Assembly (NCBI RefSeq): GCF_000143415.4 | Contig: NW_003314288.1 | Span: 424,917-442,246 of the forward strand | DNA from: Selaginella moellendorffii | Taxonomy: Eukaryota; Plantae; Lycopodiophyta | Length of the DNA stretch: 17,330 nt | Direction of reading: 5' to 3' | Shown: positions 1 through 17,330 of the stretch, in pieces | How positions within the stretch are numbered: the first letter of the stretch is position 1 | Layout of the letters: every line of letters starts with the position of its first letter | Translations under genes and position numbers: made by a program | Notes under the pieces: model-generated | Told to the model about the DNA's origin: nothing | Databases searched by the model: none | The model's input: only the letters and a program-made list of their open reading frames with translations

Positions 1-994
1 TCTAGCAAACCTTTTTCAAGAAAAACCTTCTCTAAGTAAATTGTAGCCAAGTTTTAGGCAGTGATACTCTTCCAAAGAGCTAACAACCGCACATACTTCA
101 TCACATGATCCACTATGACCCATACTTGCTCCTTTTGCCTTTGTATTCGTGGCACATAAGTGATGAAGTCCATAGAGATACTACACCAACGGCTATGAGG
201 AATAAGTAAAGGTTGCAAAAGCCCCATTGACTTCTCCTGTGGCACCTTTACCCACTGACAGAACTCATATGACTTACAATACTTGAGGATATCAGCCTTC
301 ATATTCCTCCAATAGAAATTGTGCTTAATCAACTCATATGTCTTCTTCCCCCCAAAATGACTGGCCTCTAGACGATCATGATAGTGAAATAAAACGTGAG
401 TAATTAACGCATCCACCCATAGCAAATACACATGGCCATTATAGTAAAGAATCCCATCCATCAATTCCATCTGGGCTTGCAACGAGACCACCTCAAAATC
501 TTGAGCTTGAGCATGCTCAACCAATTGCCCAAACTCGCAAACCACCTTACTCAAATGATGACAAAACCATGTTTGTAATACTATCACATAGTGAACATAA
601 GATAAAGCATCTGCCACCACATTCGATTTTCCCGGACAATACTTAATAGGAAACTCCCCAAACTCCATGAGTTTGACCATCGAACAAGGTTGCCTAGTGT
701 TCAACTCCTTTTGTATGAAAAGATACACAAGTGGTTTGCGATCTGTCAACACTATGAACATTGCACTATAAAGATAGTGCCACCACGTCTGCAAAGCATG
801 AACAATAGAGAGTAACTCTTACTCATATGTGGAATAGCATTGCTTTGTAGGATTCAAAGTTTGACTCTCATATGCAATACGTTGTCCCTCTTGCATGAAA
901 ACTCCTCCCAGTGCATAACCACTCGCATCATATGTCACCTCATAAGGTTTCATGGATCAGCAATGCAAAGCACTAGAGCCTCGCTCAACAATCA
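1..994 (-). mobile_element. Degenerate Ty3/gypsy LTR retrotransposon pol fragment (RNase H, integrase zinc finger, start of integrase core)
   Basis: Minus-strand translation gives RNase H motifs (YDASGYALGGVFMQEGQRIAYESQTL...YSTYE*ELLSIVHALQTWWHYL, TDRKPL, PGKSNVVADALS), then integrase HHCC (YHD..ASHFGGKKT...YCKSYEFCQ) and GLLQPLLIP..RW.SISMDFIT. RH-before-INT order is gypsy-type. Contains stops and frameshifts. Confidence 0.95.
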
Positions 995-5803: not shown

Positions 5804-7444
5804 TTTCTGGTGGGACAACAAGTTCAAGAAGAAAAAAAAGTTCTTCTCAGAGTCCTACCCGGATTTCAAACATGTTTCTACCGGAGAGAGGGATCGCCAA
5901 CAGGAAAACACCAACCTGGGTCTCTGCAAAACTCGAGTCGCTCGCTGACCCAGCTGCACCACGGCCCGCTACAAATCTCCACATACCCCACCTGTAGCTG
6001 GTGATGAACCGGTGAGTTTAGGGAGGCCGCGTGAGAGACTCAGCTGAGAGCAGATCCCTTTCTTTGGGAAAACAAGCCCATGACGCTGTGCTCAAGAGTG
6101 ATGAGCACAAAAGCAACATCTACTTGTTGACGGGATTGATCGATATGTACTGCAAGTGTGGCGAGCTTGAGGAGGCTCGCAAGATTTTCCACTCCATGGG
6201 AACTCGGAGTGTTGTCTCCTACACTGCGATCATCCAGGGCTGCAACACGAACGGGCAAGCTGAACTTGCTCTGGAGTACTACTCTGCCCTGAGAGCTGAT
6301 AACACCATTCAAGCTAATGCTTGCACCTCCACCTGTGTCCTTGTTGCTTGCGGGAGTGTGATGGCGATCAAGCTCGGGAGGGAGATTCACCAGCTGGCGA
6401 AGCATAAAGAACTGCTGAAAAACAATCCAGTTCTGGGCTCCAGCCTGGTGAGCTTCTACGGCAAATGCGGCAATGTTGATTCTGCTCAGGAAGCGTTTGA
6501 CGAGTGCCGAGCTCGGGACAACACGGGTCTCTGGAACTCTCTCATACAGGCTTACACTCTCCAGGGCCGATCGATCGAGGCCTTGGAGCGTTTCTATTCC
6601 ATGACTCAGGAGGAGGGCTGTAAAGCTGACGATGTGAGTTTTGTCTCGGTGTTGAACGCTTGCAGCCATGGTGGTCTGGTCGGGAAAGGAAGGCTGCTTC
6701 TGGATGAAATGCCCAAGCAGTATGGAGTCAAGCCACGTCTGGAGCATTATGTGTGCCTGATCGATATGCTCGGGCGAGCTAACCTCCTCGACGAAGCTGT
6801 GAGAGTTCTCAGAGCCATGCCTTTTGAACCGGATGCAGTGGTTTGGACGTCCCTGCTTGGAGCCTGCTGGAAGTGGAAGAATTACACGATCGGCAAACTC
6901 GCGTTTGAGTGTCTTGTGGAGATGGATCCCAAGAGCGGCACGCCCTACGCATTGATGGCCAATATATTTGGAAACCTGGGGATGCTCAGTGAAAGGGCTG
7001 CTGTTGTGGAGAGAATGAGAGGTGAAGGCAGCTTCAGGAGCCCGGGAGAAGCTGGTGGACGGATGTTAGCTCTCTTTCTCTTCCTCGGGTATGTCTTTTA
7101 GAACGTTGATCACATCGCTCATGTACCCTGCTCTTTCATTCTCAGCAACAATTGCTTGAGCTTGGCCGCAATCTCGTCGCTCTGTGAGTGACTCCTATCC
7201 CTGACAGAAAAAGAATGCACTTTTCCTGGATCACCTGTGCGGCCACGGTGAGAAGCTTGTGCTGGGGTGTGCTCTGGTGAAGTCACACCAGAAGGAGACC
7301 ATCAGAATTGTGAGAAATCTCCAAGTTTGTGACAATTGCCATGCGGCCACTGCTCTCATCTCTAAGCTGGAAAAAAAGGCTAATCATCTGCAAAGGGTTC
7401 ATGTGTTCCAGGATGGCAGATGTTCCTGTGACAACTACTTTTGA
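5804..7444 (+). pseudogene. PDF-PPR(PLS)-E-DYW pseudogene, copy A
   Basis: Homologous to 11279-13930. Lacks the equivalent of 10856-11278 (upstream region, ATG, start of PDF), has small deletions in the PDF region, lacks three PLS triplets, has a 1-bp deletion near 7037 and an inversion at 7072-7228. Ends HGEKL...CDNCH...RVHVFQDGRCSCDNYF*. Confidence 0.93.
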
Positions 7445-7684
7445 AAACATGTCAGTGCTCTTTCTTGCAGTTATCCCTGGTTTTAAACCCTCTGTGAGTC
7501 AAGCAGAAACATGGGCCGCTGAGTGAGCATGCCTCGTCAAAGTACCGCCACCAACCTGAACTTCACGGAGAAAAAATTAACATTTAAAAGTTAAAACTAT
7601 GCAAAAGGAGGATGACACATTGTCTTAAATTTAAATTTCTTTTTGGTAGCAGAATCGGGGAATGCTGACTAAACCTGCCAACAG

Positions 7685-8561: not shown

Positions 8562-9348
8562 TCATTTCCTCCTCTCAGAATAACGGAAGACCATTAGGGT
8601 TCTTTTATAAATGGGTTGGGATCTGGAGGAATATCAGGAGAAGGCATTGGCGGATCTGTAGGTGGTATTATCTCCTCCTAATCCCTTTGTATGAAGCGTT
8701 TCAACTGCTGCATATGCACAATCTCTGGAGGATTGGCCTACTGGACGTTATGCCGAACCTCATAAACTTGTGGTCCCACTTGCCACAACACCTGATACGG
8801 TCCTTTCCACTAAGCAAGGAGCCCTTGAGATAAACCATATACCGTAAGGTGGGGAAAACAGACCAACACCAAGTCATTAACTGAAAAGGTCCTATAAGAT
8901 CAAATGCCACTAACTTAAATGGACGGGAAACTGAAATTGACTCCAACCATCCTTTCGCAGCACGAGGGGGAGTATTACGAGCTTGGCACCAAACGCAACT
9001 ACACACATACCAGATAATACCACATCGCATCTTTGACCAATAGAAAGACCTATGTAGCTTCTCGGTTACACGACAATGTCCCATATGCCCACCTATAATA
9101 GAAGAATTATGGTAGGCATGGAGAAACCACGGAATAAAGACAGAAGGCACCACCAGCTGTAAATGATCATCAGGATCAGTCCCTACAAAATAAAAAAGGC
9201 CATCTTCAAGGTGATATTGAGAATGTAAATGCCAGAAAGGCAAGTCATCAACAAGTGATGTAAGATTCTCAAACTCATCTTGAAGCTTTTGAATCCACGG
9301 CTCAATCTTTTGAGCCTTGAAAACCTCATCAAAAGAAGGCAGATCTTG
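8562..9348 (-). mobile_element. Ty3/gypsy integrase fragment with internal deletion (zinc finger joined to GPY/F tail and PPT)
   Basis: LVVP...LHAYHNS.IGGHMG..RVTEKL.RSFYW.KM...I..YV.SC.WCQ...SRPF.LVAFDLIGPF, then in another frame WKGPYQVLWQVGPQVYEV...IVHMQQLKRF. Most of the DDE core is missing. Confidence 0.9.
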
Positions 9349-10397: not shown

Positions 10398-11195
10398 CTG
10401 AAGATGTCAATCGAAGCATGCAAGCAAAAACATGAAGTAAAGAAGCACAGGTGGACAACAAAGGAGATGAACTGAGTGAGGCCAAGAACACATATAAGGA
10501 CTGAATGTAAGCACGTGAGGCCTCGTGTGGTTTTTTCCTCCGTGCGTGGCTTCATGTGCGAAGAGTTTGGTGTGGTAAGGTATGTTGTGGAGCAGCCAGA
10601 AGCCCAGGGTGAATATAAGTACGTGAGGCCTTGTGAGGTTTTACCACCGCCCAAGGACTCCTGTGCATGGGCCCGGACGAGAGTCATTTGCGAAAGTGTT
10701 CTGCATGAAACTGGTGCCCTGAGGCTTCTGGCCGAAGAGCATTTTTTATTTAATTTGTGTAGAGTGTGGTTTATTTTTGCATATTGAGTGTATCGATATC
10801 TTTTAGTTAGCAGATTATATTGAAGAACTGAAGACAAGTGCATGCAGCAACAGATCATATAAAAAATGAATGCAGAGAATAACAAATCGGGATTTCTAGG
10901 AAGTTCGTGCGTTTTGTTAGTAATAATAATAATAATCACAAAAACCTGATGTTCAGCCAGTTAGAAGATTGTCTGAAAATTATGCATGTACTGATTCTTC
11001 AGCTCTTGAGCAACTGATTGCTGCTGGCTCACTTTCTATATATATCAAAGAGATTATTTTTTAACAATAAACATCTAAGCTAGTTAAGCTGACATTGTAA
11101 AGTTTAAAAAGGAAAAGAATTAGAAAAAGAAAAAACAGAAAACACGAGCTTTTTACTACTACAGTTAAGTAATAACAAATCGGGATTTCTAGGGT

Positions 11196-14012
11196 ATGCG
11201 TGCGGCGCTAGGGTTTGTGTGGTGTCTGTCATTTCTCAACAATCTCATGGAGTGGAAAACGTTTTTCAGGGATCCCACTTTCTGGTGGGACAACAGGTTC
11301 AAGAAGAAAAACAAGTTCTTCTCAGAGTCCTACCCGGATTTCAAACATGTTTCTACCGGAGAGAGCCTGTGGATCGCCAACAGGAAAACACCAACCTGGG
11401 TCTGTGCAAAACTCGAGTCGCTCGCTGACCCAGCTGTAGGTAAGGCCACCACCGCCCGCTACAAATCTCCACATACACCGGTGAGTTTAGGGAGACTGAT
11501 ACACCGCGTGAGAGACTCAGCCAAGAGCAGATCCCTTTCTTTGGGAAAACAAGCCCATGAAGCTGTGCTCAAGAGTGATGAGCACAAAAGCAACATCTAC
11601 TTGTTGACGGGATTGATCAATATGTACTGCAAGTGTGGCGAGCTTGAGGAGGCTCGCAAGATTTTCGACTCCATGGGAACCCGGAGTGTTGTGTCCTACA
11701 ACGCGATCATCCAGGGCTGCGGCTCGAACGGGCAAGCTGAACTTGCTCTGGAGTACTACTCTGCCCTGAGAGCTTGTACCACCATTCAACCCAACGATCG
11801 GACACATGTCGCGGTGATCAGCGCCTGCTCCAGACTTGCTACCGAATCCAGCGAGAAGAGGAAGAGAGCTTTACGCATCGGGATGGAGATCCATTCAATG
11901 CTGAGCAAGGAGAAGAAACAGGTAGATCTGTTCGTGGCGACTTGCCTGGTAGACATGTACTGCAAGTGTGGCGAGCTTGAGGAGGCTCGCAAGATTTTCG
12001 ACTCCATGGGAACCCGGAGTGTTGTGTCCTACAACGCGATCATCCAGGGCTGCGGCTCGAACGGGCAAGCTGAACTTGCTCTGGAGTACTACTCTACCCT
12101 GAGAGCTTGTACCACCATTCAACCCAACGATCGGACTCATGTCGCGGTGATCAGCGCCTGCTCCACACTTGCTACCGAATCCAGCGAGAAGAGGGAGAGA
12201 GCTCTACTCATTGGGATGGAGATCCATTCAATGCTGAGCAAGGAGAAGAAACAGGTGGATCTGTTCGTGGCGACTTGCCTGGTAGACATGTACTGCAAGT
12301 GTGGCGAACTTGAGGAGGCTCGCAAGATTTTCGACTCCATGGGAACCCGGAGTGTTGTGTCCTACAACGCGATCATCCAGGGCTGCGGCTCGAACGGGCA
12401 AGCTGAACTTGCTCTGGAGTACTACTCTACCCTGAGAGTTTGTACCACCATTCAACCCAACGATCGGACTCATGTCGCGGTGATCAGCGCCTGCTCCACA
12501 CTTGCTACCGAATCCAGCGAGAAGAGGGAGAGAGCTCTACGCATCGGGATGGAGATCCATTCAATGCTGAGCAAGGAGAAGAAACAGCTAGATCTGTTCG
12601 TGGCGAATTGCCTGGTAGACATGTACTGCAAGTGTGGCGAGCTTGAGGAGGCTCACAAAATTTTCCACTCCATGGGAACTCGGTGTAGTGTTGTGTCCTA
12701 CACCGCGATCATCCAGGGCTGCAACACGAACGGCCGAGCTGAACTTGCTCTGGAGTACTACTCTGCCCTGAGAGCTGATAAAACCGTTCAAGCTGATGCT
12801 TGCACCTACACCTGCGTCCTTGTTGCTTGCGGGAGTGTGATGGCGATCAAGCTCGGGAGGGAGATTCACCAGCTGGCGAAGCATAAAGGGCTGCTGAAAA
12901 ACGATCCAGTTCTGGGCTCCAGCCTGGTGAGCTTCTACGGCAAATGCGGCGATGTTGATTCTGCTCAGGAAGCGTTTGACGAGTGCCGAGCTCGGGACAA
13001 CACGGGTCTCTGGAACTCTCTCATACAGGCTTACACTCTCCAGGGCCGATCGATCGAGGCCTTGGAGCGTTTCTATTCCATGACTCAGGAGGAGGGCTGT
13101 AAAGCTGACGATGTGAGTTTTGTCTCGGTGTTGAACGCTTGCAGCCATGGTGGTCTGGTCGGGAAAGGAAGGCAGCTTCTGGATGAAATGCCCAAGCAGT
13201 ATGGAGTCAAGCCACGTCTGGAGCATTATGTGTGCCTGATCGATATGCTCGGGCGAGCTAACCTCCTCGACGAAGCTGTGAGAGTTCTCAGAGCCATGCC
13301 TTTTGAACCGGATGCAGTGGTTTGGACGTCCCTGCTCGGAGCCTGCCGGAAGTGGAAGAATTACACGATCGGCAAACTCGCGTTTGAGCGTCTTGTGGAG
13401 ATGGATCCCAAGAGCGACACGCCCTACGCATTGATGGCCAATATATTTGGAAACCTGGGGATGCTCAGTGAAAGGGCCGCTGTTGTGGAGAGAATGAGAG
13501 GTGAAGGCAGCTTCAGGGAGCCCGGGAGAAGCTGGTGGACGGATGTTAGCTCAGGAAAAGTGCATTCTTTTTCTGTCGGGGATAGGAGTCACTCACAGAG
13601 CGACGAGATTGCGGCCAAGCTCAAGCAATTGTTGCTGAGAATGAAAGAGGAGGGGTACGCGAGTGATGTGATCAACGTTCTAAAAGACATACCCGAGGAA
13701 GAGAAAGAGGATCACCTGTGCGGCCACAGTGAGAAGCTTGCGCTGGGGTGTGCTCTGGTGAACTCGCACCAGAAGGAGACCATCAGAATTGTGAAAAATC
13801 TCCGAGTTTGTGACGATTGCCATGCGGCCACTGCTCTCATCTCTAAGCTGGAAAAAAGGCCATCTGCAAAGATGCCAGTCGGGTTCATGTGTTCCAGGAT
13901 GGCAGATGTTCCTGTGACAACTACTTTTGAAAACATGTCAGTGCTCTTTCTTGCAGTTATCCCTGGTTTTAAACCCTCTTTGAGTCAAGCAGAAACATGG
14001 GCCGCTGAGTGA
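11196..14012 (+). CDS. PLS-class pentatricopeptide repeat protein with N-terminal OSB-type PDF motif and E1-E2-DYW (WW-type) cytidine deaminase domain; C-terminus frameshifted at 13860/13861 (ancestral stop at 13930)
   Basis: 938-aa ORF. PDF motif aa 20-73. Repeated P/L/S motifs (LVDMYCKCGELEEARKIFD, VVSYNAII..., ACSHGGLV, HYVCLIDMLGRA), E1 (VWTSLLGACR), PG box PGRSWWTD, HSEKLA (13725) and KNLRVCDDCH (CxxC 13809-13820). The true start could be Met18 (11247). Confidence 0.93.
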   Translation: MRAALGFVWCLSFLNNLMEWKTFFRDPTFWWDNRFKKKNKFFSESYPDFKHVSTGESLWIANRKTPTWVCAKLESLADPAVGKATTARYKSPHTPVSLGRLIHRVRDSAKSRSLSLGKQAHEAVLKSDEHKSNIYLLTGLINMYCKCGELEEARKIFDSMGTRSVVSYNAIIQGCGSNGQAELALEYYSALRACTTIQPNDRTHVAVISACSRLATESSEKRKRALRIGMEIHSMLSKEKKQVDLFVATCLVDMYCKCGELEEARKIFDSMGTRSVVSYNAIIQGCGSNGQAELALEYYSTLRACTTIQPNDRTHVAVISACSTLATESSEKRERALLIGMEIHSMLSKEKKQVDLFVATCLVDMYCKCGELEEARKIFDSMGTRSVVSYNAIIQGCGSNGQAELALEYYSTLRVCTTIQPNDRTHVAVISACSTLATESSEKRERALRIGMEIHSMLSKEKKQLDLFVANCLVDMYCKCGELEEAHKIFHSMGTRCSVVSYTAIIQGCNTNGRAELALEYYSALRADKTVQADACTYTCVLVACGSVMAIKLGREIHQLAKHKGLLKNDPVLGSSLVSFYGKCGDVDSAQEAFDECRARDNTGLWNSLIQAYTLQGRSIEALERFYSMTQEEGCKADDVSFVSVLNACSHGGLVGKGRQLLDEMPKQYGVKPRLEHYVCLIDMLGRANLLDEAVRVLRAMPFEPDAVVWTSLLGACRKWKNYTIGKLAFERLVEMDPKSDTPYALMANIFGNLGMLSERAAVVERMRGEGSFREPGRSWWTDVSSGKVHSFSVGDRSHSQSDEIAAKLKQLLLRMKEEGYASDVINVLKDIPEEEKEDHLCGHSEKLALGCALVNSHQKETIRIVKNLRVCDDCHAATALISKLEKRPSAKMPVGFMCSRMADVPVTTTFENMSVLFLAVIPGFKPSLSQAETWAAE
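11253..11414 (+). other. PDF motif (OSB/PTAC9-type ssDNA-binding module) within the PPR ORF
   Basis: WKTFFRDPTFWWDNRFKKKN...YPDFKHVSTGESLWI....PTWV..KL matches the OSB PDF pattern W..FF..P..WWDNR..K.N...PDFKHK.TG.ALW.....P.WV...L. Confidence 0.88.
11622..12776 (+). repeat. Intragenic 333-bp tandem repeat, about 3.5 units, each one P-L-S triplet (111 aa)
   Basis: atgtactgcaagtgtggcga recurs at 11622, 11955, 12288 and 12621. Units differ by only a few substitutions. Confidence 0.98.
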
Positions 14013-14047
14013 GCATGCCTCGTCATTGAGCTCTCACAATGAGCTCT

Positions 14048-17109: not shown

Positions 17110-17330
17110 ATGCGTGCGGCGCTAGGGTTTGTGTGGTGTGTGTCATTTCTCAACAATCTCATGGAGTGGAAAACGTTTTTCAGGGATCCCACTTTCTGGT
17201 GGCACGACAGGTTCAAGAAGAAAAACAAGTTCTTCTCGGAGTCCTACCCGGATTTCAAACATGTTTCTACCGGAGAGAGCCTGTGGATTGCCCACAGGAT
17301 AACACCAACCTGGGTCTCTGCAAAACTCGA
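17110..17330 (+). CDS. PDF-PPR gene copy C, 5' part only (open to window end)
   Basis: MRAALGFVWCVSFLNNLMEWKTFFRDPTFWWHDRFKKKNKFFSESYPDFKHVSTGESLWIAHRITPTWVSAKL, no stop before the window ends. Confidence 0.85.
   Translation, partial: MRAALGFVWCVSFLNNLMEWKTFFRDPTFWWHDRFKKKNKFFSESYPDFKHVSTGESLWIAHRITPTWVSAKL

What the first reader, a model, noticed from the sequence alone, without database searches (positions are those of the whole stretch)
11196..13930. OSB-type ssDNA-binding PDF motif fused to a PPR-DYW deaminase
Seen: one uninterrupted ORF joins a WWDNR...PDFKH..TG..LW motif to a PLS array and an E1-E2-DYW domain with intact HSE and CxxC. The fusion occurs in all three tandem copies (remnant at 5804-5945, intact at 17167-17328), so it predates the duplications and is not a one-off chimera. 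Established: PDF motifs are the ssDNA-binding units of plant organellar OSB/PTAC9 proteins, and PLS-DYW proteins are site-specific organellar C-to-U RNA editors that normally carry only a transit peptide upstream of the repeats. Inference: this may be an editor tethered to nucleoid ssDNA or transcription bubbles/R-loops, one with a built-in nucleic-acid-binding cofactor, or a deaminase able to act on ssDNA. I do not know of a functional description of this architecture but cannot check the literature.
Basis: partly seen in the sequence, partly recalled or inferred. Interest (0 to 1): 0.9.

Follow-up and report, generated by a model that had tools for sequence, protein, structure and literature searches.

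The report
OSB-type PDF module on PPR-DYW editor
A spikemoss gene for an organelle RNA-editing-type enzyme (PPR repeats plus a DYW deaminase) really does begin with the small "PDF" single-stranded-DNA-binding module of plant OSB proteins; I found no paper describing this old, widespread combination, and this particular copy is damaged by a 4-base deletion.

Summary
The motif is real. An HMM built from 389 PDF motifs of non-PPR (OSB-type) proteins scores the N-terminus at 70 bits (E 4e-24). A confident AlphaFold model of it matches, in all of Swiss-Prot, only the PDF motifs of Arabidopsis OSB1-4.

It sits on the same transcript as a PLS PPR array and E1-E2-DYW, with no splice joints.

The ORF is not intact as described. 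A 4-bp deletion after 13860 shifts the frame and removes the last 22 residues of the DYW domain. Reads without the 4 bases exist, so it is not an assembly error. This copy supplies only about 5-10% of family reads. Copy 1 is a wreck, and copy 3 has lost an invariant Asp. Intact paralogs exist in the S. moellendorffii reference.

PDF+PPR proteins also occur in Sphagnum, Adiantum, Ceratopteris and a second Selaginella family.

New here: OSB genes (Marchantia, Sphagnum, Brachypodium) and PDF-PPR genes (Sphagnum, Selaginella) share a phase-0 intron at the same codon inside the motif. The window's family has lost it.

No paper in the library describes the architecture, and its function is untested. 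This scan had already found the architecture at eight or more other loci of this genome.

The parts
11196..14012 (+). Copy 2: the longest ORF (938 codons). It encodes PDF, linker, PLS array, E1, E2 and a DYW domain with an aberrant frameshifted tail.
11247..11249 (+). Probable start codon (MEWKTFF...). It places the PDF motif at residue 3 of the protein.
   Evidence: The upstream ATG at 11196 is in frame here and in L004 but out of frame in L001. RNA coverage begins at about 11200-11206.
11250..11429 (+). PDF motif (OSB-type): ORF residues 19-78.
   Evidence: 70.4 bits, E 4e-24 against an HMM of non-PPR PDF motifs. AF2 pLDDT 92.4. Fold matches only OSB1-4 in Swiss-Prot.
11430..11576 (+). Variable Ser/Thr/Ala/Arg-rich linker. 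Paralogs carry an extra 18 nt at 11476/11477.
   Evidence: loose ends at 11476/11477
11577..13355 (+). PLS-class PPR array.
   Evidence: Pfam PPR, PPR_1, PPR_2 and PPR_3, E down to 5.6e-66
11622..12776 (+). 333-bp tandem repeat, 3.5 copies at 96% identity. One unit equals one P-L-S triplet.
   Evidence: more units in L001
13359..13643 (+). E1 and E2 motifs.
   Evidence: PF20431 at residues 722-780 and PF20430 at residues 789-816
13654..13859 (+). In-frame part of the DYW deaminase domain, with HSE at 13725-13733 and CDDCH at 13809-13823.
   Evidence: PF14432 positions 1-69 of 93
13860..13861 (+). Site of the 4-bp (TAAT) deletion relative to intact paralogs. It causes the frameshift.
   Evidence: Alignment with L001. 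RNA reads with and without the 4 bases (table 4).
13862..13930 (+). Out-of-frame remnant of the DYW tail (ICKDAS...CSCDNYF) and its original stop codon (13928-13930).
   Evidence: compare the intact tails
5805..7523 (+). Copy 1: a degenerate remnant. The PDF motif is frameshifted after STGE, stops are present, most PLS triplets are missing, and 7072-7228 is inverted.
17110..17330 (+). Copy 3: the start of the gene, cut off by the window end. The PDF motif reads WWHDR in place of WWDNR.

Best explanation
SHOWN:
- The window holds a tandem triplication (unit about 5.9 kb) of a Selaginella nuclear gene family.
- Its protein is, from N to C: an OSB-type PDF module at the very N-terminus, a roughly 35-50-residue linker, a PLS-class PPR array, E1-E2, and a DYW cytidine deaminase.
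- The PDF module is homologous to that of OSB ssDNA-binding proteins in sequence, predicted fold and, in sister PDF-PPR genes, intron position.
- PDF-PPR proteins form an old family found in moss, lycophyte and ferns.
- The copy under study (copy 2) has a real 4-bp deletion that removes the last 22 residues of the DYW domain, including the CSC motif. It is transcribed at a low level next to intact paralogs.

INFERRED MECHANISM, for the intact family members:
- The PPR array binds an organellar RNA in a sequence-specific way, and the DYW domain deaminates a C just 3' of the bound stretch.
- PPR arrays bind RNA in parallel, N-terminal repeats to the 5' side. The N-terminal PDF module would therefore sit at the 5' edge of the footprint.
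- There it would act as a sequence-independent single-stranded nucleic-acid clamp. It would raise affinity and keep the target unfolded, as a built-in accessory factor in plants that lack the MORF helpers of seed plants (absence stated from my own knowledge, not tested here).

INFERRED STATUS of copy 2: most likely a decaying paralog, or at best a specificity-only factor without its own catalysis.
For: Identity of the motif:
- phmmer of residues 15-80 against 1.84 billion proteins gave 482 hits. Most are SSB(OB-fold) proteins with 1-13 motif copies, and NCBI names their relatives OSB1/2/4.
- An HMM of 389 non-PPR motifs scores the window at 70.4 bits, E 4e-24.
- All 4 invariant and 9 near-invariant columns of 115 aligned motifs are present.
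- The AF2 model has pLDDT 92.4. In Swiss-Prot it matches only Arabidopsis OSB1-4 PDF motifs, TM 0.71-0.78.

Same mRNA:
- Stranded RNA-seq coverage is continuous from about 11200 to 14025 with no splice joints.
- P0270 is a transcriptome ORF by its source name (EukProt) that carries 3 PDF motifs plus PPR. P0028 (3 PDF plus PPR) lies as one uninterrupted ORF on a single contig, L003.

Family and age:
- Intact paralogs are L001 (1235 aa) and L004 (1029 aa). L004's DYW aligns end to end with solved PPR-DYW structures 9kfx and 7o4e.
- PDF+PPR also occurs in Sphagnum, Adiantum, Ceratopteris and a second Selaginella family.
- Atlas PPR/DYW clusters of 127, 63 and 57 members match the PDF model.
- A phase-0 intron directly after WWDNRxxK is shared by OSB genes of Marchantia, Sphagnum and Brachypodium and by PDF-PPR genes of Sphagnum and Selaginella.
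- PPR-linked PDF motifs cluster on the tree. The tree that holds them as one clade has the higher likelihood, p-AU 0.81.

Deletion:
-.

ssDNA binding by PDF:
- Reported for AtOSB1 and AtOSB2 in reviews PMC6963530 and PMC4166229.
Against: - No binding, localisation or editing data exist for any PDF-PPR protein.
- OSB1/2 were reported to prefer ssDNA over RNA (PMC4166229). That favours a DNA-tether reading over an RNA clamp.
- The Selaginella DYW family has at most 0-17 residues ahead of the PDF motif. No canonical organellar transit peptide is evident, so organellar location is assumed rather than shown.
- All other PDF-PPR proteins I retrieved as sequences end in E motifs without a DYW domain.
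- The repeated, near-identical P-L-S triplets are odd for a site-specific editor.
- Reads carrying the extra TAAT sit close to the 97% likeness cut-off. The share of reads with the deletion is therefore only roughly known.
Confidence: 0.55

Rival explanations
1. Nucleoid tether. The PDF module binds single-stranded organellar DNA (transcription bubbles, R-loops, replication or recombination intermediates). It would hold the editing factor at the nucleoid so that editing happens co-transcriptionally.
For: The PDF motif of AtOSB1 is reported to suffice for ssDNA binding, and OSB1/2 prefer ssDNA to dsDNA or RNA (PMC6963530 and PMC4166229). The module in the PPR proteins keeps every conserved residue of OSB motifs and the same predicted fold.
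Against: There is no evidence of location or DNA binding for any PDF-PPR protein. Only one motif is present in the Selaginella family, whereas many OSBs have several copies and form tetramers.
Confidence: 0.22
2. The PDF module is a protein-protein or import module rather than a nucleic-acid binder in this context. It might dock onto OSB or other nucleoid proteins, drive oligomerisation, or act as an uncleaved N-terminal targeting element.
For: In the Selaginella family the module lies at the extreme N-terminus, where a transit peptide is expected. Other lineages have a 16-110-residue presequence in front of it.
Against: The conserved aromatic and basic residues of the OSB motif are all retained. 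This is expected if the ancestral nucleic-acid-binding role is kept. The N-terminal stretch has acidic residues (E2, D9, D15), which is unlike typical presequences.
Confidence: 0.13
3. The local array is simply a set of pseudogenes, and the PDF-DYW combination in this window has no function. The motif is preserved only because the duplications are recent.
For: Copy 1 has stops, deletions and an inversion. Copy 2 has the 4-bp frameshift in DYW. Copy 3 has lost an invariant Asp. Window-specific alleles and the window-specific 3' flank account for only about 5-10% of family reads.
Against: This applies only to the window's copies. Intact ORFs exist at L001 and L004, and the architecture is conserved from moss to ferns. 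The family as such is therefore under selection. Editing factors with a truncated DYW domain can work with a deaminase supplied in trans in angiosperms (my own knowledge, not tested here).
Confidence: 0.6
4. The PDF module presents ssDNA to the DYW domain, so the protein acts as a DNA cytidine deaminase.
For: Only the co-occurrence of an ssDNA-binding module and a cytidine deaminase in one protein.
Against: The PDF and DYW domains sit at opposite ends of a long PPR superhelix. The DYW, E1 and E2 parts are ordinary editing-factor sequences. Most PDF-PPR relatives lack a DYW domain altogether.
Confidence: 0.03

Closest known systems
PDF motifs of plant OSB proteins (Arabidopsis OSB1-4; Zaegel et al. 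2006, as summarised in PMC6963530 and PMC4166229)
   Same: - The same roughly 60-residue module with the signature W..P..WWDNR..K..PDFKH..TGE.LW..P.WV.
- The same predicted fold: TM 0.71-0.78, rmsd 1.4-1.6 A, 36-42% identity.
- The same phase-0 intron site in sister PDF-PPR genes.
   Different: - There is no SSB-like OB-fold domain.
- The module is N-terminal and single, not C-terminal and repeated.
- It is followed by PPR-E-DYW.
- The window's family has lost the intron.
Canonical PLS-E1-E2-DYW organellar C-to-U RNA editing factors (for example OTP86/At3g63370, PDB 7o4e; synthetic PPR-DYW, PDB 9kfx)
   Same: The PLS array, E1, E2 and DYW domain with HxE and CxxCH are all present. Paralog L004 aligns over the whole DYW domain, E 1e-38.
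   Different: - An extra PDF module stands where only a transit peptide is normally found.
- The terminal tripeptide is NYF or NCF instead of DYW.
- In this copy the last 22 residues are lost through a frameshift.
PPR proteins with accessory domains (RRM, SMR, NYN, LAGLIDADG, CBS, SAP), as listed for Physcomitrium in PMC9459714
   Same: The same principle: a PPR tract combined with a second nucleic-acid-related module.
   Different: PDF is not among the accessory domains listed there. Those accessory domains mostly occur on P-class proteins rather than on PLS editing factors.
Trans-acting editing helpers MORF/RIP and ORRM of seed plants (my own knowledge)
   Same: A possible functional analogy: extra, unspecific contacts that strengthen RNA binding by the PPR protein.
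   Different: They are separate proteins with unrelated folds. No homology is claimed.

Membership tests
OSB-type PDF motif (module level) | A conserved 50-60-residue signature including WWDNR, PDFKH and TGE.LW. | tested here: met
   70.4 bits, E 4e-24 against an HMM of 389 motifs from non-PPR proteins. All invariant and near-invariant columns are present.
OSB-type PDF motif (module level) | The same fold as the PDF motifs of Arabidopsis OSB1-4. | tested here: met
   The AF2 model (pLDDT 92.4) matches OSB1-4 PDF regions and nothing else in Swiss-Prot at TM above 0.25. Both sides are predictions. No solved structure exists.
OSB-type PDF motif (module level) | A phase-0 intron after WWDNRxxK, found in the OSB genes examined. 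| tested here: not met
   The intron is present in OSB genes of Marchantia, Sphagnum and Brachypodium and in PDF-PPR genes of Sphagnum and Selaginella P0113. It is absent from the window's family, which shows no joint in RNA reads. I read this as secondary intron loss.
OSB-type PDF motif (module level) | Binds single-stranded DNA. | not testable with these tools
   Reported only for AtOSB1/2 in the literature.
OSB protein family (whole protein) | An SSB-like OB-fold domain upstream of the PDF motif or motifs. | tested here: not met
   Pfam finds no SSB domain in the window's protein. OSB-type hits do have PF00436. The protein is therefore not an OSB; it only carries the module.
PLS-class PPR-DYW RNA editing factor | A PLS PPR array followed by E1 and E2 motifs. 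| tested here: met
   PPR families at E down to 5.6e-66; PF20431 and PF20430 matched.
PLS-class PPR-DYW RNA editing factor | DYW deaminase with the HxE and CxxCH zinc/catalytic motifs. | tested here: met
   HSE at 13725-13733 and CDDCH at 13809-13823.
PLS-class PPR-DYW RNA editing factor | A complete DYW C-terminus (CxC and the terminal DYW-like tripeptide). | tested here: not met
   A 4-bp deletion after 13860 puts the tail out of frame. Pfam covers positions 1-69 of 93. The feature is met in paralogs L001 and L004.
PLS-class PPR-DYW RNA editing factor | An N-terminal organellar transit peptide. | tested here: inconclusive
   Only 0-17 residues precede the PDF motif. No predictor was available. 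Relatives in other plants have 16-110-residue presequences.
PLS-class PPR-DYW RNA editing factor | Site-specific C-to-U editing of an organellar transcript. | not testable with these tools
   No target was predicted, and no organelle sequences were at hand.

The most novel reading that the evidence does not exclude
PDF-PPR proteins, with or without DYW, are a conserved class of non-seed-plant factors that physically couple RNA editing or processing to single-stranded organellar DNA. That would mean co-transcriptional editing at R-loops or transcription bubbles. In the Selaginella DYW branch, which lacks an evident transit peptide, they might instead act in an unexpected compartment or on DNA itself.
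Probability: 0.15. Interest if true: 0.85.

Novelty: new variant of a known kind. Interest (0 to 1): 0.62.

Why it matters
PPR-DYW proteins are the best-understood programmable C-to-U editors, and they are being engineered as tools. They are thought to need only a targeting peptide ahead of the repeats.

A conserved extra module, borrowed with its intron from organellar ssDNA-binding proteins and kept from mosses to ferns, points to an unstudied layer of how early-diverging land plants organise editing. These plants have thousands of editing sites and, to my knowledge, no MORF helpers. The module could be a built-in single-strand clamp or a link between the nucleoid and RNA maturation.

It also provides a natural accessory domain to test for improving designer editors. 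The paralog whose PDF motif is half deleted (L005), together with the intact paralogs, forms a ready-made natural comparison. The specific copy in this window is damaged and is of interest mainly as a record of family turnover.

Tried and rejected
- Pfam has no model for the motif. The N-terminal 101 residues give no hit at E<=1.
- The PDB has no relative by sequence or by fold.
- dN/dS across the PDF region among paralogs: only 1-7 nucleotide differences, too few to say anything.
- The word-indexed search with residues 1-110 found only two Selaginella models, because of its length and word limits. The exhaustive phmmer search was needed.
- Literature searches with 'PDF motif', pentatricopeptide, OSB/PPR/DYW, WWDNR and PDFKH found no description of the fusion. 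The Physcomitrium PPR review lists no PDF domain.
- A 32-nt loose end of one RNA contig in front of 11222 could not be placed in any fetched locus. It stays unexplained, and I did not treat it as an upstream exon.
- P0176 (Diphasiastrum OSB) was not on record for a gene-structure check.
- One search was a coordinate slip, corrected.
- The idea of an assembly error at the frameshift was rejected. 8-18 reads per run span 13860 without the 4 bases.
- I did not attempt a PPR-code target prediction, because no organelle sequences were available.
Full report
**What is in the window**

The window is Selaginella DNA. It is 91-97% identical to three loci of the S. moellendorffii reference GCA_000143415.2 (L001, L004, L005) and identical to none of them.

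It holds three tandem copies of one gene, with a unit of about 5.9 kb:
- Copy 1 (5805-7523) is a remnant. Its motif is frameshifted, it contains stops, most of the PPR array is missing, and 7072-7228 is inverted.
- Copy 2 is the ORF 11196-14012.
- Copy 3 starts at 17110 and is cut off by the window end.

**Check of the observation**

Copy 2 encodes, in one frame:
- the WWDNR...PDFKH...TGE.LW motif (11250-11429);
- a linker;
- a PLS PPR array, with Pfam PPR families at E down to 5.6e-66;
- E1 (PF20431) and E2 (PF20430);
- a DYW domain with HSE and CDDCH.

The frame opened at 11196 does not stop at 13930 but at 14012.

Alignment with the intact paralog L001 shows that 4 bases (TAAT) are missing after 13860. 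The authentic tail (ICKDAS...CSCDNYF, stop at 13928-13930) lies in another frame. Pfam's DYW model is matched only over positions 1-69 of 93. The last 22 residues, including the CSC motif, are therefore lost.

RNA reads settle whether this is an assembly error. In three stranded RNA-seq runs, 10-16 reads per run carry TAAT at that site, and 8-18 reads span it without an insertion (table 4). The deletion is real and a deletion-bearing copy is transcribed.

One caveat applies. A read with 4 extra bases sits at the 97% likeness threshold I set, so reads from intact paralogs are under-counted there, and depth dips in that bin.

Two window-specific signals suggest that copy 2 supplies roughly 5-10% of the family's reads:
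- the G at 11404 is seen in only 2-5 of 66-89 reads;
- the window's own 3' flank beyond 14025 has depth 7-9, against about 100 or more within the gene.

**Is the motif the OSB PDF motif?**

Yes, on four independent lines.

1. Exhaustive sequence search. A phmmer search with residues 15-80 against 1.84 billion representative proteins gave 482 hits at E<=1e-3, and most carry the motif 2-13 times. Those I examined have an SSB-type OB-fold (PF00436) upstream. Their relatives are named OSB1, OSB2 or OSB4 by NCBI. Some proteins, such as P0152, P0141 and P0145, appear in both lists.

2. I built an HMM only from 389 motif instances in non-PPR proteins. It scores the window's N-terminus at 70.4 bits, E 4e-24. 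In an alignment of 115 motifs, the window has all 4 invariant and all 9 near-invariant residues.

3. Predicted fold. With that alignment, AlphaFold2 gives a compact helix-strand-helix-strand-helix module (pLDDT 92.4, pTM 0.77). Against the predicted structures of all reviewed UniProt entries, the only real matches are the PDF regions of Arabidopsis OSB1 (185-241), OSB2 (308-358), OSB3 (376-426) and OSB4 (291-342). These have TM 0.71-0.78, rmsd 1.4-1.6 A and 36-42% identity. No solved structure resembles it by sequence or fold.

4. Gene structure, which is new here. OSB genes have a phase-0 intron exactly after the conserved Lys of WWDNRxxK. This holds in Marchantia paleacea (L007), Sphagnum jensenii (L009) and Brachypodium (L008). 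The same intron, at the same codon and phase, interrupts the PDF motif of two PDF-PPR genes:
   - Sphagnum compactum (L006);
   - the second Selaginella family, P0113 (L002 3079-3148, GT..AG).

   The module therefore entered PPR genes as genomic DNA, intron included.

The window's family has no intron there: the ORF is continuous and RNA reads show no joints. I read this as secondary loss, which fits the retroposition-driven spread usually assumed for PLS genes. That last point is inference.

**One mRNA?**

Stranded coverage (RNA on the + strand) is zero from 10600 to 11184. It begins in the 11185-11301 bin, with molecule ends at 11206. It then runs without splice joints through the PDF motif, the PPR array and the DYW domain to about 14025.

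The ATG at 11196 is in frame in the window and in L004, but out of frame in L001. The conserved start is therefore the ATG at 11247 (MEWKTFF). This puts the PDF motif at residue 3 of the protein.

In other species, P0270 is a transcriptome ORF by its source name (EukProt). P0028 lies as one uninterrupted ORF on a single 4.7-kb contig, L003. Each carries three PDF motifs and the PPR array.

**How widespread is it?**

- Intact PDF-PLS-E-DYW ORFs exist at L001 (1235 aa from MEWK) and L004 (1029 aa).
- L005 has lost the first half of the motif but keeps the PPR-DYW ORF.
- L004's DYW domain aligns end to end with solved PPR-DYW structures, 9kfx at E 1e-38 and 7o4e.
- PDF+PPR proteins also occur in a second Selaginella family (P0113/P0153), in Adiantum (P0105, P0271, P0273), in Ceratopteris (P0276), in Sphagnum (P0277, a cluster of 25 sequences), and in several assembled contigs or transcripts of unidentified origin.
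- Those retrieved sequences end in E motifs without a DYW domain.
- The ESM Atlas holds three PPR clusters (127, 63 and 57 members, two of them named DYW) whose representative matches the PDF model at TM 0.76-0.85.

A tree of 125 motifs is poorly resolved, but PPR-linked motifs cluster: 3 changes against 16.2 in shuffles. The tree that holds them as one clade has a higher likelihood than the free search (+20 lnL, p-AU 0.81). A single ancient fusion is therefore compatible with the data, though not proven.

**Mechanism**

Shown: the architecture, its transcription and its conservation.

Established elsewhere:
- PPR arrays bind RNA one nucleotide per repeat, in parallel orientation.
- DYW is the deaminase.
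- The PDF motif of AtOSB1 suffices for ssDNA binding, and OSB1/2 prefer ssDNA to dsDNA or RNA (PMC6963530 and PMC4166229).

Inference: in the intact proteins, the PDF module lies on the 5' side of the PPR footprint, far from the edited C. It probably serves as a sequence-independent single-strand binder. That could be an RNA clamp acting as a built-in accessory factor (my preferred reading), or a tether to single-stranded organellar DNA (the main rival). A direct role in DNA deamination is unlikely, given the geometry and the many DYW-less relatives.

An open problem is import. The Selaginella DYW family has at most 17 residues before the motif, while relatives in other plants have 16-110-residue presequences.

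Copy 2 itself lacks the C-terminal zinc-binding part of the DYW domain. It is most simply a decaying but still weakly transcribed paralog.

**Known or new?**

'PDF motif' in the OSB sense occurs in only a handful of papers in the searchable library, and none mentions PPR proteins. The catalogue of accessory domains of Physcomitrium PPR proteins does not include it. The proteins are in public databases, but only as generic 'pentatricopeptide repeat-containing protein' models.

This scan has already followed up the same architecture at eight or more other loci of this genome, with the same conclusion. I re-tested the core claims independently. New in this report:
- the shared intron position;
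- the Swiss-Prot-wide fold result;
- the status of this particular locus.

I place it as a new variant of a known kind: an editing-factor family with an unrecognised accessory module.

Noticed in passing
window 11622-12776; L001 10394-12562: The 333-bp unit (one P-L-S triplet, 111 aa) is repeated 3.5 times here at 96% identity, and about twice as often in paralog L001. NCBI gene models (P0001, P0002, P0009) splice these repeats out as false introns. Near-identical triplets would imply a 3-nt periodic RNA target.
   Followed up: partly
window 7072-7228 (copy 1) and reads at 13551/13709: Copy 1 carries a 157-bp inversion relative to copy 2 and to the reference paralogs. A few RNA reads per run show an 'opposite strands' joint at exactly the equivalent places of copy 2 (table 5). 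A copy with the inversion therefore appears to be transcribed too.
   Followed up: partly
L005 1977-1995 (GL377646.1): This paralog has the first half of the PDF motif replaced by a short unrelated stretch, yet the PPR-E-DYW ORF stays open. It is a natural 'PDF-less' variant, useful for comparison.
   Followed up: partly
window 54-794 (-) and 8701-9243 (-): ORF fragments with integrase zinc-binding (PF17921) and RT RNase H (PF17917) domains. These are LTR-retrotransposon debris between and beside the tandem units.
   Followed up: no
model m43594d333d38 (window 11238-11435): The Atlas fold search lists phage (Uroviricota) protein clusters at TM 0.50-0.67 to the PDF model. In one of them, 58% of members carry Rad52_Rad22, an ssDNA-annealing protein family. 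The match is short and weak: a lead on the origin of the PDF fold, not a finding.
   Followed up: no
P0003 (Kingdonia uniflora, 1160 aa), P0004, P0005: Proteins with 9-13 tandem PDF motifs, far more than the 1-3 (OSB4: 4) usually cited. P0035 (kinesin) and P0026 (ICR2-like) also carry PDF motifs, possibly through merged gene models.
   Followed up: no
window about 11222, run X1: One RNA-library contig continues upstream of 11222 with 32 nt that match none of the fetched loci. It may be another paralog's 5' region or a chimeric contig. Unexplained.
   Followed up: partly
window 11250-11417 versus flanks: The PDF-coding stretch differs by only 1-2 nt in 168 between copy 2 and L001/L004, while the surrounding DNA is 92-96% identical. 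This is compatible with purifying selection or gene conversion.
   Followed up: partly
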